IMG/VR virus record: IMGVR_UViG_3300035698_007246
Span: 124,001-188,000 of that record
Direction: 5' to 3' (one strand)
DNA: 64,000 bases
Under the pieces are notes generated by a model, which was not told the DNA's origin, made no database searches, and worked only from the letters and a program-made list of their open reading frames with translations. A program made the position numbers and the translations under genes. This document shows, piece by piece, positions 12,576 through 23,294 of the stretch. Each line of letters opens with the position of its first letter. Within the stretch, counting starts at the first letter, position 1.

Positions 12576-12658
12576 TGGTAGTGTAGGTGGGAGTTGAACC
12601 CACATTCTCAACACCAATTACGATTCTCCACCTTATCAGAGTGGGTCGGTACTACACT
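12576..12658 (-). tRNA. non-canonical tRNA-Ile(GAT): no D arm, D-loop-like variable arm
   Basis: AGTGTAG/CTACACT-A-CCA; connector TACCGAC; CCACT-CTGATAA-GGTGG; 24-nt variable region with AATTGGT; canonical T arm. Confidence 0.75.
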
Positions 12659-12680
12659 ATTTGATTTTCATTTCTAAAAG

Positions 12681-12688
12681 TATTTATA
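12681..12688 (-). promoter_or_regulatory. T4-type late promoter
   Basis: TATAAATA about 22 bp upstream of the tRNA. Confidence 0.5.
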
Positions 12689-12723
12689 TCTTTTATTAAT
12701 TAAAAACGAACCAATTTTAAAAA

Positions 12724-13476
12724 TTATGGCTCAATAATATTAAACTGAGTTATTTCAAAAATATCTGGGGTAACATCACTAATGTATCTCCAGTACCAAA
12801 TATTTAGTGCCCCCGGCATAATATTTATTTGTGATGTATGGTCATACATACACTCATAAATTTTACCCCTATGAATAACAATATCACCCGGAACATTTGG
12901 AACCGCACTTGCGTTATAAAGTTTTGGTGATGTCCATGCGTCATAATTAATAGAAATATTTCTCATATATGTCATTCTAACTATGGTTGCATTATTTACA
13001 TCCCATGCCTTTTTAAATGCAATACCTTGCACACCATACAAATAAAAATGTTTTTTTGCGTCTTCCCACTGCGTTTCATCTGGTAGTAAAGAACCATTTA
13101 ATAAAGCATTTTTAATATTTACCTGTACTCGGACTTTTCTACCATTAATTATTCTATACGGAAACGTGTACTCTGAATACCATCCCTTTGGATTTTCTGT
13201 TAATAAAAAATTAGTATCTTTATTAATTTCATTTAATACCATTTTTGATAGTATTCCAAATTGATTATACAAACTTTCTGTTTCTTTTTCACAACTCCAT
13301 TCAATTATGAATTGGTTCATAGTACTTGTAACTACATCTGTGCATGAATCGACATTATTAGAATTAGTAATAGTTGATTGATTGAGGACTTCATTGATAT
13401 GGTCATTCAATACATCTTCCGACATAACCAATCCAATGATAAATAGTAAAATTAAAATAGGTTTTGTTAATCTCAT
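12724..13476 (-). CDS. secreted/membrane protein with C-terminal CBM5/12-like module
   Basis: Signal-like N-terminus; GDIVIHRGKIYECMYDHTS...PG..W pattern. Confidence 0.55.
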   Translation of the reverse strand: MRLTKPILILLFIIGLVMSEDVLNDHINEVLNQSTITNSNNVDSCTDVVTSTMNQFIIEWSCEKETESLYNQFGILSKMVLNEINKDTNFLLTENPKGWYSEYTFPYRIINGRKVRVQVNIKNALLNGSLLPDETQWEDAKKHFYLYGVQGIAFKKAWDVNNATIVRMTYMRNISINYDAWTSPKLYNASAVPNVPGDIVIHRGKIYECMYDHTSQINIMPGALNIWYWRYISDVTPDIFEITQFNIIEP

Positions 13477-13528
13477 AAGATAACCCCTTATGTTAAATTA
13501 AAAATTAAATTAATAAATTGTTAACATA

Positions 13529-13557
13529 ATTATATATTTTGGGACATGTGATGTCAA
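13529..13557 (-). promoter_or_regulatory. sigma70 consensus promoter
   Basis: TTGACA-17-TATAAT. Confidence 0.8.
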
Positions 13558-13565
13558 TACTTATT

Positions 13566-13868
13566 TTATATTTCTTTAATTTGTTTTCTTTCTATCAGTA
13601 TTTTAACAAGTTCAGCAGGTAATGGAAAATGTTCCGGTCTAACTCTGGCTTCATGAAGTAAAATTCTATCCATCACTTCATTCTTTTCTCCACCAGTAAA
13701 ATATTTATTACATAATCTATCATCACCAGATATTCTTTTGAATTCATAGTCTGTTACTTTCTCATCATTTTCTGGATGTAAACATTGAAGTTCAACCAAT
13801 TCAGCAATTAATGAACCTTGGTCGTTTTCGTATGTAATTTGATATTTTTTACCGACTTTAAATTTCAT
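13566..13868 (-). CDS. hypothetical protein
   Basis: Start trimmed to MKFKVG (AAGGA RBS) because longer ORF overlaps tRNA-Lys. Confidence 0.55.
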   Translation of the reverse strand: MKFKVGKKYQITYENDQGSLIAELVELQCLHPENDEKVTDYEFKRISGDDRLCNKYFTGGEKNEVMDRILLHEARVRPEHFPLPAELVKILIERKQIKEI

Positions 13869-13889
13869 TGTATTTCCTTTTAAAAATAG

Positions 13890-13961
13890 TACGTCCGGTG
13901 GGATTCGAACCCACACCTTACTGATTAAGAGTCAGCCATGCCACCACAACACCTCGGACGC
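13890..13961 (-). tRNA. tRNA-Lys(CTT)
   Basis: GCGTCCG/CGGACGT, loop CTCTTAA, canonical T arm. Confidence 0.88.
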
Positions 13962-13972
13962 AAATAAATATA

Positions 13973-14048
13973 TGTTAGTCACTGGACTCGAACCAGTATC
14001 TTTCCTATCAACAAGGTCTGTTTTCCACCAATCAGACATCACGAACCC
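13973..14048 (-). pseudogene. degenerate tRNA-like element
   Basis: Perfect T arm ACTGG-TTCGAGT-CCAGT and D-like hairpin, poor acceptor and anticodon arm. Confidence 0.4.
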
Positions 14049-14115
14049 GATTAATCGAATATTATCCACACGGTATAACACCCAACCCTCGTAATAAGCG
14101 TATGTGTTTCCTTCC

Positions 14116-14207
14116 TGCTTCAAACTCGTTAAACTATACCAACATATCAACATTGAATTGGTGATTGGTCGAGGATTTGAACCTCAATCTTCCTGCTATT
14201 AACAGGA
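14116..14207 (-). ncRNA. circularly permuted tRNA-like element (anticodon AAT)
   Basis: Anticodon arm, T arm and ACCAATC-ACCA come first, then linker, then TGTTGGT acceptor strand and D arm. Confidence 0.55.
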
Positions 14208-14330
14208 TATTTTTAATAGAGTGCTTTAGAATTCATCCACACTAAACTATAAAGATAGATTTAAATTTTACTTTTCATGAAATTTTCAAAAAAATCTTAC
14301 TCACCAGACTTAAAATAACCAACCATGTAA

Positions 14331-14408
14331 TGGCACTCTGGACAGGATTCAAACCTACGATACCGGGATTAGAAATCCCGTGCTTTATTCAGACTAAGCT
14401 ACCAGAGC
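14331..14408 (-). tRNA. tRNA-Arg(TCT)
   Basis: Cloverleaf, loop TTTCTAA, CCA. Confidence 0.88.
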
Positions 14409-14421
14409 ATATTTGAATTAT

Positions 14422-14590
14422 AAAGAATGAACAGGATTTGATACCTGTAAGGTTGCGTACTCATAACTAAGGTAAGTGTGAAGGGTCTATTCTCACAATA
14501 CCCACCAACCATGACTGTCTGACCTCTCTTCATAAGCCATTGTGTTTAATTCTCTGGTTTGCGACCAGAAGTCTTTCACCATCATTCTTT
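14422..14590 (-). ncRNA. tRNA-like RNA with about 100-nt insertion
   Basis: AAAGAATGA/TCATTCTTT closing stem, TCTGG-TCGCAAA-CCAGA arm, T-like arm ACAGG-TATCAAAT-CCTGT. Confidence 0.5.
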
Positions 14591-14598
14591 CAATTGAT

Positions 14599-21794: not shown

Positions 21795-21804
21795 GTAAAC
21801 GAAT

Positions 21805-21879
21805 TGGTACTCGGTAGGGGAATCGAACCCCTGCGATGTGGTCGAAAACCACATGTCCTTGCCGTTAGACGAACCGAGC
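21805..21879 (-). tRNA. tRNA-Glu(TTC)
   Basis: Canonical, loop TTTTCGA, CCA. Confidence 0.9.
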
Positions 21880-21884
21880 ATATA

Positions 21885-21965
21885 AGGAACACAATTTGAT
21901 TTTTAGCTACCTTTGTATTTAAAACAAATGCTTTTTTTGTTTGCTGAATTCAAACTTCAGTTCCC
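21885..21965 (-). ncRNA. clamp element G (minimal)
   Basis: Compensatory TTTGA/TCAAA; insert TTTGT-TTTAAAT-ACAAA. Confidence 0.72.
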
Positions 21966-21974
21966 ATGATTTAT

Positions 21975-22003
21975 AATATAATAAATGACATTTGAAATGT
22001 CAA
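21975..22003 (-). promoter_or_regulatory. sigma70-like early promoter
   Basis: TTGACA-17-TATATT. Confidence 0.75.
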
Positions 22004-22022
22004 TAGTTATTTTCAAAAAAAT

Positions 22023-22096
22023 ACCTTTGTTCGGACTCGAACCGAAAATCTCACGCATTAAAAGTGCGTTGCTTTAGCCAATTAAGCTACAAAGGC
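22023..22096 (-). tRNA. tRNA-Lys(TTT)
   Basis: Canonical, loop CTTTTAA. Confidence 0.9.
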
Positions 22097-22102
22097 ATAT
22101 AA

Positions 22103-22308
22103 AAGGACTCAGGCTGATATATTATATGGCTGCTCATACACAGGCTCTTTCGAGTTTCTGCCAGCGAGCAGGACATCATTCTTTCGTTTGATTTACCCCA
22201 GACACCGAAATGTCCATCTTGAACAAGACCGTAGCTCACGCCTTAGATATTGTCAACTACCTTAGAACCATTATTCATATAGACTGCTGAATTCAGCCTT
22301 CTGTCCTT
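22103..22308 (-). ncRNA. clamp element H with about 165-nt structured insert
   Basis: Compensatory GGCTGA/TCAGCC; TTCG and GAAA tetraloop hairpins. Confidence 0.7.
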
Positions 22309-22356
22309 ATGAGACTTGTTTGCAAATACGTCAAGGGAATGTTCTTCGTATTAAAA

Positions 22357-22433
22357 TGGTGGAAGTGAGGGGGATTGAACCCCTGACCTTCTGGTTGCAA
22401 ACCAGACGCTCGTCCCAACTGAGCTACACCCCC
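22357..22433 (-). tRNA. tRNA-Ala(TGC)
   Basis: G3:U70, canonical, CCA. Confidence 0.93.
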
Positions 22434-22437
22434 ATAT

Positions 22438-22530
22438 AAATCGCAACTCAGATTGATGTAAAGCGGTTAAACTTTTCAATAGTTTTGGAAACCTTTTTAG
22501 ATTGCTGAAATCAATCTTCAGTTGCGATTT
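22438..22530 (-). ncRNA. clamp element I (minimal)
   Basis: P1 AAATCGCAAC/GTTGCGATTT; insert AAACT-ATTGAAA-AGTTT. Confidence 0.75.
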
Positions 22531-22611
22531 TCTTTTTCAAAGGATTCTTCAAATAATGTATTTATTAAAATGACTACTTAAAGACTAATTTATGTACCCT
22601 ATTAACTTATA

Positions 22612-22934
22612 TAACGATGATAAATTGCCCTGTTTATAATCTACTCCATCCGATAGGTGCATAGCAGCCATAGTGTGGTCGGCACTTTCTTATGATGTCC
22701 ACACCGTGTTATGATGATTGCTCATCGACTGACACCCCAATCATATCATCGCTTATGAATTTAATAGAATTTAATGATGTCAGGAATTGAACCTCACAAC
22801 AACACATCATTAAATTCTATCGGTGTTATCCATCACCCTATTGAATTTTGCCCCGCCATACATTATCCAGAATCAAGTATGCAGGAAAAACATTCCTGTG
22901 ACCATCGCTTGTACTTTACGTGTCAGCCGGGGCA
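22612..22934 (-). ncRNA. cluster of three candidate structured RNA domains
   Basis: Closed stems at 22612-22755, 22764-22820 (T-loop hairpin), 22849-22934. Confidence 0.5.
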
Positions 22935-23104
22935 TTTAATTTATTTTCTTCATTAAATTTCTTAACTTCTTTTTCATAATTTTCACGTGACATATCATTA
23001 AATACTTTTTTATCACGACCATTTATGAATTTCTTTTGCATTAATTCGAAATGTTCTTTAGATTCTCCATATGTTCTTTCATACCATTCTGGTTTTTCAG
23101 TCAA
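22916..23104 (-). CDS. hypothetical protein
   Basis: 62 aa, non-ATG start per track. Confidence 0.45.
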   Translation of the reverse strand: MTEKPEWYERTYGESKEHFELMQKKFINGRDKKVFNDMSRENYEKEVKKFNEENKLNAPADT

Positions 23105-23210
23105 TTCTCTTATAGTGAATGATGAACATACATACCAATCGTTTTTATATATTTCCGATTGTTTGTATATTTTCTAATCCGTTTTGGTAAAATATTTTAT
23201 TTATAAAAAA

Positions 23211-23294
23211 TGGTAGACGCATAGGGACTTGAACCCTAATTTTCAACAACCAATTACGAATATACTGCTTATGAGGCAGTCTCGGTATACGTCT
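23211..23294 (-). tRNA. non-canonical tRNA(CAT): no D arm, D-loop-like variable arm
   Basis: AGACGTA/TGCGTCT-A-CCA; connector TACCGAG; ACTGC-CTCATAA-GCAGT; variable TTCGTAATTGGTTGTTGAA. Confidence 0.75.

What the first reader, a model, noticed from the sequence alone, without database searches (positions are those of the whole stretch)
12576..23294. Two tRNAs with the D arm deleted and a D-loop-like hairpin in the variable position
Ile(GAT) at 12576-12658 and CAT at 23211-23294 have different acceptor and anticodon stems but share TACCGA in place of the D arm. Both also share TCGTAATTGGT(T)GTTGARAAT in the variable region. That segment contains the D-loop signature AATTGGT, and its TTGGT can pair with the ACCGA connector. 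Both have perfect T arms and encoded CCA. Conservation across two divergent copies argues for a selected alternative tRNA fold rather than decay.
Basis: partly seen in the sequence, partly recalled or inferred. Interest (0 to 1): 0.82.

Follow-up and report, generated by a model that had tools for sequence, protein, structure and literature searches.

The report
Phage tRNAs with a rewired D-arm
Two isoleucine-type tRNA genes in this salt-lake phage belong to a large family of phage tRNAs, missed by standard tRNA finders, in which the D stem is built from two distant strands and the D loop sits after the anticodon arm: a natural alternative to the universal cloverleaf.

Summary
On the minus strand, 12658-12576 (anticodon GAU) and 23294-23211 (CAU) are tRNA-like genes with intact acceptor, anticodon and T arms, A73 and an encoded CCA. 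Only 7 nt stand where the D arm should be, and 24-25 nt stand in the variable position. They are not isolated. I found about 86 distinct close homologues, all with Ile-type anticodons (GAU/CAU/UAU). I also found sister types, including an Arg(UCU/UCG) type that occurs unannotated in the cultured Pseudomonas phage PA11. Nearly all are on phage or metagenome contigs. It supports a different fold, in which connector nt 9-13 pair with UCG after the anticodon arm and with two nt after the D-loop-like segment. This gives a 5-bp D-like helix that continues into the anticodon stem, with the D loop as a bulge. R15 and the nucleotide before the T stem covary without exception (AU 30, GC 29), as in the canonical Levitt pair. 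The nucleotide after GG is U in the Ile type and A in the Arg type, matching known synthetase identity elements. The most likely function is as translating tRNAs with a rewired core. No expression or charging data were available. I found no published description.

The parts
12576..12658 (-). Rewired tRNA-Ile(GAU) gene including encoded CCA (12578-12576) and discriminator A (12579)
   Evidence: Sequence; Rfam tRNA 34.7 bits with the D arm skipped; own covariance model R1 91.6 bits; missed by ARAGORN
12645..12651 (-). GAU gene: U8 and the 5' strand of the D-like helix (A9 C10 C11 G12 A13), then N26 = C
   Evidence: Family pair counts: 10-w1 CG49/UA9/UG1; 11-v7 CG59; 12-v6 GC47/AU12; 13-v5 AU42/GC13/UA2/CG1; N26-v2 GU34/CG11/AU3/GC3/other 8
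12628..12644 (-). GAU gene: anticodon arm; anticodon GAU at 12637-12635
   Evidence: Sequence; all 5 stem pairs covary in the family
12621..12627 (-). GAU gene: A-G-A-A linker (its G pairs with N26 = C), then UCG, the 3' strand part 1 of the D-like helix
12613..12620 (-). GAU gene: relocated D loop U-A14-A15-U-U-G18-G19-U20, extruded as a bulge
   Evidence: R15 with Y48: AU30/GC29, no exception; U after GG is a known bacterial Ile identity position
12604..12612 (-). GAU gene: G-U (pair with C10 and A9), then tail UGAGAA and U48, the Levitt partner of A15
   Evidence: the homologous two pairs covary in the Arg type
12580..12603 (-). GAU gene: T arm (12603-12587) and 3' acceptor strand (12586-12580)
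23211..23294 (-). Rewired tRNA(CAU) gene, probably tRNA-Ile2, including CCA (23213-23211) and discriminator A (23214); anticodon at 23273-23271
   Evidence: Sequence; Rfam tRNA 35.2 bits with the D arm skipped; R1 90.4 bits; missed by ARAGORN
23281..23287 (-). CAU gene: U8, 5' strand of the D-like helix (A C C G A), N26 = G
23246..23263 (-). CAU gene: AUAU linker, UCG (23259-23257), relocated D loop UAAUUGGUU (23256-23248), G-U closing pairs (23247-23246)
23239..23245 (-). CAU gene: tail UGAAAA plus U48

Best explanation
Both genes most likely encode functional elongator tRNAs of the phage. One is tRNA-Ile(GAU) for AUU/AUC. The other is a CAU tRNA that is probably tRNA-Ile2, read as AUA after lysidine modification. 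They belong to a phage-borne tRNA family whose core is wired differently from the cloverleaf.

Proposed fold:
- After U8, nucleotides 9-13 run straight down into the anticodon stem.
- The return strand of the anticodon stem continues upward. It pairs N26 with the second linker nucleotide, then pairs UCG with C11-G12-A13.
- The chain then leaves the helix as an 8-13 nt bulge that carries the D-loop consensus (U A14 R15 Y Y G18 G19 U20).
- It re-enters to pair with Y10 and A9, and reaches the T stem through a 7-nt tail ending in Y48.

In effect the anticodon arm and the D loop have swapped places around a D-like stem. The stack of anticodon stem plus D-like helix keeps about the canonical length.

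Shown here: the helix, and the R15-Y48 covariation.
Inferred: that U8-A14 and the G18G19 to T-loop contacts form, that the RNA is L-shaped, and that it is charged by the host IleRS (the Arg type by ArgRS) and used on the ribosome.

Why phages keep this wiring is open. Escape from host enzymes that read the canonical D arm is the leading idea.
For: (1) Anatomy of both genes.

(2) Family size. Pattern scans returned about 86 distinct sequences with intact stems, and every anticodon is GAU, CAU or UAU.

(3) Covariation in the Ile type. In 59 distinct sequences, including 15 from a scan that left the helix letters free: 10-w1 CG49/UA9/UG1; 12-v6 GC47/AU12; 13-v5 AU42/GC13/UA2/CG1/other 1; N26-v2 GU34/CG11/AU3/GC3/other 8; R15-Y48 AU30/GC29 with none broken. 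Overall 97.8% of cells are paired, against 32-44% when partners are slid. No shuffle out of 500 reaches the observed covariation score.

(4) Covariation in the Arg type. Its helix letters were also free in the scan. All five helix pairs covary: GC24/AU8/CG2/UA1; CG25/UA8/AU1; CG35; GC23/CG5/AU4/UA3; AU14/CG11/GC2/UA2/UG1. A further subtype swaps CGG/CCG, CGC/GCG and CCC/GGG.

(5) Identity nucleotides. The Ile type has U after GG and A73. The Arg type has an invariant A after GG, plus C35 and U/G36. Both match the bacterial identity sets tabulated in PMC9976931.

(6) Context. Both genes sit in a 27-gene tRNA array that contains no other Ile tRNA. The array has two other CAU tRNAs: one with the initiator C1xA72 mismatch and one elongator-like.

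(7) Cultured phage. Pseudomonas phage PA11 and four relatives carry the Arg(UCU) form with CCA. tRNAscan-SE found no intact tRNA in one of them, TC6. That genome is 45% GC in a 66% GC host, the usual setting for a phage AGA decoder.

(8) The sequence is identical in independent salt-lake runs.
Against: - No expression, processing, modification or charging data. No RNA run was listed.
- RNAalifold predicts only the three classical stems and leaves the core open. The D-like helix rests on covariation, not on thermodynamics.
- C11-G never varies.
- The N26-v2 pair fails in 8 of 59 sequences, all with N26 = U.
- The E. coli Ile identity pairs U12-A23 and C29-G41 are not conserved here.
- Many related phages also carry a canonical tRNA-Ile, sometimes directly adjacent. 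The rewired copy is therefore not simply filling a gap.
- Whether the bulged loop can reach the T loop was not modelled.
- Most pattern scans fixed some core letters, which inflates apparent conservation. Searches are the unbiased scans.
Confidence: 0.8

Rival explanations
1. Counter-defence specialisation (compatible with the main explanation). The rewired core makes these Ile and Arg tRNAs poor substrates for host tRNA-directed nucleases or other enzymes that read the canonical D arm or elbow. Phage translation would then continue when host tRNAs are cut.
For: Many phages carry a canonical tRNA-Ile as well as a rewired one of the same anticodon, in L098 directly abutting. This suggests a non-redundant benefit. 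The family is almost confined to phage contigs: only 2 hits, both on MAG contigs rich in tRNA genes, in one genome for each of 185,579 species. tRNA-cleaving defences and phage tRNAs that neutralise them are established (abstracts of PMC13096335 and PMC12851939; Ile- and Arg-specific tRNase toxins are from my own knowledge).
Against: No defence gene, nuclease or cleavage site was linked to these tRNAs here. The anticodon loops are ordinary, whereas known escape tRNAs mostly change the anticodon loop. These phages also duplicate many canonical tRNAs, for example 3-4 Asn copies, so redundancy alone proves little.
Confidence: 0.3
2. tRNA-like RNA with a non-translational role (decoy for a synthetase or nuclease, primer, regulator), or a tRNA charged by a phage-encoded enzyme, rather than an ordinary elongator.
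For: The core differs from every tRNA known to work on bacterial ribosomes. The abstract of PMC11551756 states that all known bacterial tRNAs are cloverleaf. No charging data exist.
Against: Anticodons are restricted to Ile and Arg sets with U33 and a purine at 37. Type-specific identity nucleotides are kept (A73 and U20 for Ile; A20, C35 and U/G36 for Arg). The T loop is canonical, some genes encode CCA, and the genes lie inside tRNA arrays. No synthetase or tRNA-modifying gene was found among the window ORFs scanned. In the window they are the only Ile decoders.
Confidence: 0.1
3. One reading: the D arm is deleted, ACCGA pairs with UUGGU, and the variable segment forms a D-loop-like hairpin.
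For: In the two window genes ACCGA and UUGGU are complementary, with one G-U pair.
Against: Across 38 homologues the pairing shows no double-sided change. A13 is unpaired in 14 of 38. G12's partner column is gapped in 11 and unpaired in 3. When C10 changes to U, the compensating change is at w1, not in GG. The local hairpin fails in 14-19 of 38.
Confidence: 0.03
4. Decaying tRNA pseudogenes or chance tRNA-like fragments.
For: Standard finders miss them. A few relatives have mismatched stems (for example L062, L069, L074).
Against: 97.8% of 1,357 pair cells are paired, with 396 double-sided changes. The core is conserved across contigs from many environments and across three anticodons. The sequence is identical in independent samples.
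Confidence: 0.02

Closest known systems
Canonical bacterial and phage tRNA-Ile(GAU), tRNA-Ile2(CAU) and tRNA-Arg(UCU) (Rfam RF00005)
   Same: 7-bp acceptor stem, 5-bp anticodon stem with a 7-nt loop, 5-bp T stem with a GUUCRANYC loop, U8, A14, R15-Y48 covariation, G18G19, position-20 identity nucleotide, A73 (Ile), CCA, and location in phage tRNA arrays.
   Different: There is no D hairpin between positions 9 and 26. The D-like stem is made by nt 9-13 with two separated segments 3' of the anticodon arm. The D loop lies after the anticodon arm as a bulge. The strand entering from the acceptor stem runs directly into the anticodon stem.
Metazoan mitochondrial tRNAs that lack the D arm (e.g. mt-tRNA-Ser(AGY), nematode mt-tRNAs; review PMC7609411)
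   Same: A short connector lies between the acceptor and anticodon stems. The RNA is effectively a three-way junction with an extended anticodon-side helix.
   Different: The mitochondrial forms have lost the D loop, G18G19 and usually the canonical T loop. They are flexible and need adapted partner proteins. The phage forms keep a full D-loop consensus, the Levitt covariation and a canonical T loop. They occur in phages of bacteria.
Class II tRNAs (Leu, Ser, Tyr) with long variable arms
   Same: About 20-25 nt lie between the anticodon and T stems. The 89-92 nt relatives even carry a small extra hairpin there.
   Different: Class II tRNAs keep a normal D arm, and their variable region is a self-contained hairpin. 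Here the region pairs with the 5' connector and carries the D loop. The anticodons are Ile and Arg.
Other natural non-canonical tRNAs: tRNA-Sec, tRNA-Pyl, allo-tRNAs with 8/4 or 9/3 acceptor/T branches (PMC5389517, PMC7609411)
   Same: They are natural departures from the standard cloverleaf found by metagenome mining, some of them in phages.
   Different: Those vary stem lengths and keep the order of the four arms. Here the order of the modules is changed.
Phage-encoded tRNAs that replace or outlast host tRNAs attacked by defence nucleases
   Same: They are phage-borne isoacceptors that can duplicate host or phage tRNAs. This is a possible rationale for the family.
   Different: Known cases differ from host tRNAs by point changes, mostly in the anticodon loop, not by a rewired core. 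No link to a defence system was shown here.

Membership tests
tRNA (Rfam RF00005, functional elongator tRNA) | Score above the curated Rfam gathering threshold | tested here: met
   34.7 and 35.2 bits against a cut-off of 29; canonical tRNAs in the same window score 44-68 bits
tRNA (Rfam RF00005, functional elongator tRNA) | 7-bp acceptor stem, discriminator, CCA; 5-bp anticodon stem with a 7-nt loop, U33 and R37; 5-bp T stem with a UUCRANY loop | tested here: met
   every stem pair except G53-C61 covaries in the family
tRNA (Rfam RF00005, functional elongator tRNA) | D arm: a local hairpin (3-4 bp stem, 7-11 nt loop) between positions 9 and 26 | tested here: not met
   Only 7 nt lie between the acceptor and anticodon stems; Rfam skips 15 model positions; ARAGORN fails
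tRNA (Rfam RF00005, functional elongator tRNA) | Core tertiary signature: U8, A14, R15-Y48 Levitt covariation, G18G19 | tested here: met
   U8, A14-equivalent and G19 are invariant, and G18 is nearly so; R15-Y48 is AU30/GC29 with none broken. Whether the contacts actually form was not tested
tRNA (Rfam RF00005, functional elongator tRNA) | Aminoacylation and use on the ribosome | not testable with these tools
   No RNA run was listed; no biochemical data
Bacterial tRNA-Ile identity set (PMC9976931, Table 1) | A73; G34/C34, A35, U36, A37, A38; U20 | tested here: met
   Both window genes and all family members
Bacterial tRNA-Ile identity set (PMC9976931, Table 1) | C4-G69, U12-A23, C29-G41 | tested here: inconclusive
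   C4-G69 is present in the window CAU gene but is G-C in the GAU gene. Positions 12-23 are G-C in the rewired helix. Pair 29-41 is A-U in most. These elements were defined in E. coli only
tRNA-Ile2 (CAU, lysidine-dependent) | CAU anticodon on an Ile-type body, distinct from the initiator and elongator Met tRNAs | tested here: met
   It shares the core with the GAU and UAU members. The window has two other CAU tRNAs, one with the initiator C1xA72 mismatch
tRNA-Ile2 (CAU, lysidine-dependent) | C34 converted to lysidine by TilS | not testable with these tools
   No TilS-like gene among the window ORFs scanned; the host enzyme is presumed
Mitochondrial D-arm-lacking tRNAs | Loss of the D loop and G18G19, with a degenerate T loop | tested here: not met
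   The D-loop consensus and a canonical T loop are retained
Class II tRNA (long variable arm) | Normal D arm plus a self-paired variable hairpin; Leu, Ser or Tyr anticodon | tested here: not met
   No D arm; the local hairpin fails in 14-19 of 38; anticodons are Ile

The most novel reading that the evidence does not exclude
These genes define a previously unrecognised natural tRNA fold. The anticodon arm and D loop have exchanged places around a D stem assembled from distant strands. The fold is used in real translation by many phages, including cultured Pseudomonas phages. It is maintained because it makes Ile and Arg decoders invisible to host enzymes that recognise the canonical D arm, such as defence nucleases or regulators.
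Probability: 0.3. Interest if true: 0.95.

Novelty: new variant of a known kind. Interest (0 to 1): 0.85.

Why it matters
- The cloverleaf is treated as universal outside mitochondria. A 2024 paper opens by stating that all known bacterial tRNAs adopt it (PMC11551756 abstract).
- A widespread, covariation-supported alternative wiring that keeps the D-loop, Levitt and identity signatures would show that the L-shape can be reached by a second topology in nature.
- It would give structural biologists and genetic-code engineers a natural scaffold that may be orthogonal to some host enzymes.
- It reveals a blind spot in tRNA annotation. ARAGORN misses these genes, and tRNAscan-SE reported no intact tRNA in phage TC6, so phage tRNA repertoires and codon-usage analyses are incomplete.
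- PA11-like phages of P. aeruginosa carry the Arg form, so the question can be tested directly at the bench.

Tried and rejected
- RNAalifold on 38 members predicted only the acceptor, anticodon and T stems. Single-sequence folds gave weak z-scores of -1.4 and -2.1 and inconsistent core pairings.
- Megablast of 12 kb of the window against GenBank phages hit only a canonical tRNA-Met. blastn of the window GAU gene found nothing. Other members hit only two uncultured huge phages, LR756502.1 and LR745206.1. A Klebsiella phage RaK2 hit is an ordinary tRNA-Ser.
- Most of the 61 loci from the first motif scan were coding-sequence coincidences.
- One viral scan was wasted on a mis-typed Arg pattern (0 hits) and repeated correctly.
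- No RNA sequencing run was listed for the locus.
- The scripting machine was lost. Mutual-information analysis was therefore replaced by named-structure pair counts.
- Eight literature searches found no description of this fold. The library is incomplete, so prior description cannot be excluded.
- Intron, permuted-gene and att-site-fragment readings were considered and dropped. The genes are full length, about 80 nt, colinear, and have complete acceptor stems.

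
Full report
**The window**

The first 27 kb carry 27 canonical tRNA genes, all on the minus strand (ARAGORN; Rfam). HNH endonuclease genes, a Pif1-type helicase, a Mom-like protein and an ATP-grasp protein lie among them. A T4-like replication module follows: clamp loader, gp32, RNase H, DnaB-like helicase, RecA/UvsX, and a ribonucleotide reductase carrying a LAGLIDADG insert. The window is part of a 223,879-bp IMG/VR contig. The same sequence occurs in 11 salt-lake metagenome runs from 2017-2019. The canonical set covers 17 amino acids plus a CUA suppressor, and has no Ile, His or Asp tRNA.

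**The observation**

- Each has a perfect 7-bp acceptor stem, with one G-U pair in the CAU gene.
- Each has 7 nt (UACCGAC or UACCGAG) instead of a D arm.
- Each has a 5-bp anticodon stem with loop CUGAUAA or CUCAUAA.
- Each has 24 or 25 nt containing UCGUAAUUGGU(U)GUUGARAAU.
- Each has a 5-bp T stem with a canonical loop, A73 and CCA.

Rfam's tRNA model reaches 34.7 and 35.2 bits. It does so only by replacing 15 D-arm positions with 4 nt and inserting 21-22 nt in the variable region. ARAGORN reports neither gene. The shared 16-17 nt motif occurs twice, against 0.00 expected by chance. Contigs from two other runs cover the GAU gene without a single difference.

**Homologues**

- An exact-motif scan of viral contigs gave 61 loci. 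Most were coding coincidences. Four foreign contigs held the same kind of gene with different stems.
- Patterns that freed the variable region, and then the connector, returned only genes of the same layout. They added the anticodon UAU and the connector variants UAUCGAG and UAUCGAA.
- One scan of 241 million metagenome records gave 95 loci.
- Together this made 128 matches and 91 unique sequences. Of these, 86 had at least 6/7, 4/5 and 4/5 pairs in the three classical stems. All carried GAU, CAU or UAU.
- The same pattern hit only two contigs among one genome for each of 185,579 bacterial and archaeal species. Both are Bacteroidota MAG contigs, and one has nine other tRNA genes in 8 kb.
- In GenBank phages the Ile type was found only in two uncultured huge phages of 642 and 635 kb.

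**The fold**

I aligned 38 members (A1) and counted named structures.

Its A13 partner is unpaired in 14 of 38 sequences, and its G12 partner is gapped in 11 and unpaired in 3. A local hairpin fails in 14-19 of 38.

Three other relations hold instead:
- C10 pairs with the purine just before UUG (w1).
- N26 pairs with the second nucleotide after the anticodon stem.
- The purine after UA (R15) pairs with the last nucleotide before the T stem.

C11-G12-A13 is complementary to UCG, but these letters were fixed by my patterns. To remove that bias I did two things.
- I built a covariance model and searched all fetched loci. This found neighbouring genes with CGG/CCG, CGU/ACG and CAG/CUG.
- I ran a scan that specified only loop letters. 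This found CAG/CUG, CAC/GUG, CGG/CCG and CGU/ACG.

Counts on 59 distinct Ile-type sequences (A11):

| Pair | Counts |
|---|---|
| 10-w1 | CG 49, UA 9, UG 1 |
| 11-v7 | CG 59 |
| 12-v6 | GC 47, AU 12 |
| 13-v5 | AU 42, GC 13, UA 2, CG 1, other 1 |
| N26-v2 | GU 34, CG 11, AU 3, GC 3, other 8 |
| R15-Y48 | AU 30, GC 29, none broken |

For the whole structure, 97.8% of 1,357 cells are paired, against 32-44% with partners slid by 1-3 columns. There are 396 double-sided cells, and no shuffle out of 500 reaches the covariation score. The tool warns that shuffles ignore relatedness. The slid controls and the many distinct pair types are the more telling figures.

**Sister types**

The model also picked up genes of the same layout with other cores.

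The Arg type (anticodons UCU and UCG) has an 8-nt connector, U-A plus five helix nucleotides plus N26. A scan that left all helix letters free gave 29 loci. On 36 distinct sequences all five helix pairs covary:

| Pair | Counts |
|---|---|
| 10-49 | GC 24, AU 8, CG 2, UA 1 |
| 11-48 | CG 25, UA 8, AU 1 |
| 12-38 | CG 35 |
| 13-37 | GC 23, CG 5, AU 4, UA 3 |
| 14-36 | AU 14, CG 11, GC 2, UA 2, UG 1 |

The two pairs beyond the bulge correspond to A9-U and Y10-R of the Ile type. This supports a 5-bp helix there too.

Other relatives:
- A further subtype (connector UAUC-SSS-C) swaps CGG/CCG, CGC/GCG and CCC/GGG.
- Versions of 89-92 nt expand the tail into a small hairpin.

So far the anticodons are only Ile and Arg. 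My sampling started from Ile, so this is not a census.

**Reading the fold**

Compared with the cloverleaf, the anticodon arm and the D loop have exchanged places around a D-like stem.
- The strand coming from the acceptor stem (U8, then 9-13, N26, 27-31) runs straight down.
- The return strand pairs all the way up and sends out the D loop as a bulge two pairs below the top.
- It then closes those two pairs and reaches the T stem through U-G-N-A-A-A-Y48.
- The stack of 5 + 1 + 5 pairs is close to the canonical stack of anticodon stem, the 26-44 pair and D stem.

U8, the A14 equivalent and G19 are invariant, G18 nearly so, and the Levitt partners covary. A canonical elbow is therefore plausible. 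That step is inference.

An independent functional hint comes from the nucleotide after G18G19. It is U in the Ile type and an invariant A in the Arg type. A20 is the main bacterial ArgRS determinant, and U20 is listed for bacterial Ile (PMC9976931). A73 is invariant in the Ile type.

**A cultured example**

blastn with an Arg-type member hit six records of Pseudomonas phage PA11 and its relatives TC6, PSA11, FBPa8 and PP21.

In PA11 (NC_007808.1, about 47672-47751) the gene has a good acceptor stem, a GCCCC helix strand paired with GGG and GC, anticodon UCU, G73 and CCA. It overlaps the 3' end of an annotated HNH endonuclease CDS and is not annotated. ARAGORN finds no tRNA in the 3-kb stretch examined. 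Rfam gives 38.7 bits with the D arm skipped, and my Ile-type model gives 54.9 bits.

The TC6 paper reports that tRNAscan-SE predicted no intact tRNA gene. It gives the phage as 45% GC in a 66% GC host (PMC6209634). That is the classic situation for a phage-supplied AGA decoder.

**Function**

The most economical reading is that these are working tRNAs. In the window they would be the only Ile decoders of the array. The CAU gene would be the third CAU species, beside an initiator-like tRNA (C1xA72) and an elongator-like one. With its Ile-type body, this points to tRNA-Ile2.

Why the core is rewired is not settled. Many related phages carry canonical tRNA-Ile genes as well, in one case directly abutting the rewired gene of the same anticodon. 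This argues for some non-redundant property. Resistance to host enzymes that read the canonical D arm is attractive but untested. Spread with homing endonucleases in tRNA clusters is another, neutral, possibility.

**Limits**

- There are no expression or biochemical data.
- Thermodynamic prediction does not find the short bulged helix.
- Several scans fixed core letters.
- Counts are of sequences, not independent events.
- The literature library is partial. I found no description of this architecture. A 2024 paper states that all known bacterial tRNAs are cloverleaf (PMC11551756).

Noticed in passing
L194:1481-1560 (Pseudomonas phage PA11, NC_007808.1, about 47672-47751): An unannotated rewired tRNA-Arg(UCU) with encoded CCA overlaps the 3' end of the annotated HNH endonuclease CDS. 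The same element is in phages TC6, PSA11, vB_PaeP_FBPa8 and PP21. The TC6 paper reports no intact tRNA genes.
   Followed up: yes
window 9485-9560 (-): A suppressor-type tRNA with anticodon CUA (ARAGORN labels it 'Pyl') sits in the array, which hints at UAG read-through or recoding in this phage. Similar CUA tRNAs occur in L112 and L135. The large ORFs I scanned looked uninterrupted.
   Followed up: no
window 20929-21018 (-): tRNA-Cys(GCA) is 90 nt long, with a normal D arm and a long variable hairpin (AUAUC-AUUUA-GAUAU). That is class II-like, which is unusual for Cys.
   Followed up: partly
L063, L072, L104, L123, L129, L148, L170, L177 and others: Related phage tRNA arrays hold many over-long tRNAs (81-92 nt) for class I-type amino acids (Asn, His, Met, Trp, Val, Thr, Glu), often in 2-4 copies beside normal-length ones. 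Some tRNAs also have the anticodon at position 30-32. Further non-canonical designs may be hidden there.
   Followed up: no
L164:7514-7596 (+): A tRNA-Trp(CCA) has a short 3-bp D arm plus a 17-nt variable region that reads AAUUCGUAAGAGUGGUU. This resembles the UCGUA...GG motif of the rewired family.
   Followed up: partly
L098:1450-1605 (-): A canonical tRNA-Ile(GAU) (1605-1532) directly abuts the rewired tRNA-Ile(GAU) (1531-1450). The canonical one has an odd T loop, UCAUCCC. The two differ in all stems, so they are separate lineages.
   Followed up: partly
Ile-type tail, e.g. window 12604-12610 and 23239-23245 (-): Tail positions 3 and 7 co-vary as U..A (GUUGNAAAY) or G..G (GUGGAAGAY) with no mixed forms among 86 sequences. 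This is not a Watson-Crick exchange. The tail reads like a U[GNAA]A mini-hairpin, and it is expanded to UUGA-GAUAACU-UCAA in the 89-92 nt relatives.
   Followed up: partly
L223, L227, L241: A variant with an 8-nt connector UACUCAGC has one extra U in the 5' strand, opposite the point where the D loop bulges out.
   Followed up: no
window 38164-41835 (-): The ribonucleotide reductase large subunit is 1,223 aa, with a LAGLIDADG domain inserted in the barrel domain (probably an intein). HNH endonuclease genes at 841-1440 and 25825-26319 flank the tRNA region.
   Followed up: no
L095, L096 (Bacteroidota MAG contigs JANPHP010000510.1, JANORP010000129.1): These are the only hits among representative bacterial genomes. 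L096 carries nine more tRNA genes in 8 kb, so these binned contigs look like phage sequence rather than host chromosome.
   Followed up: partly
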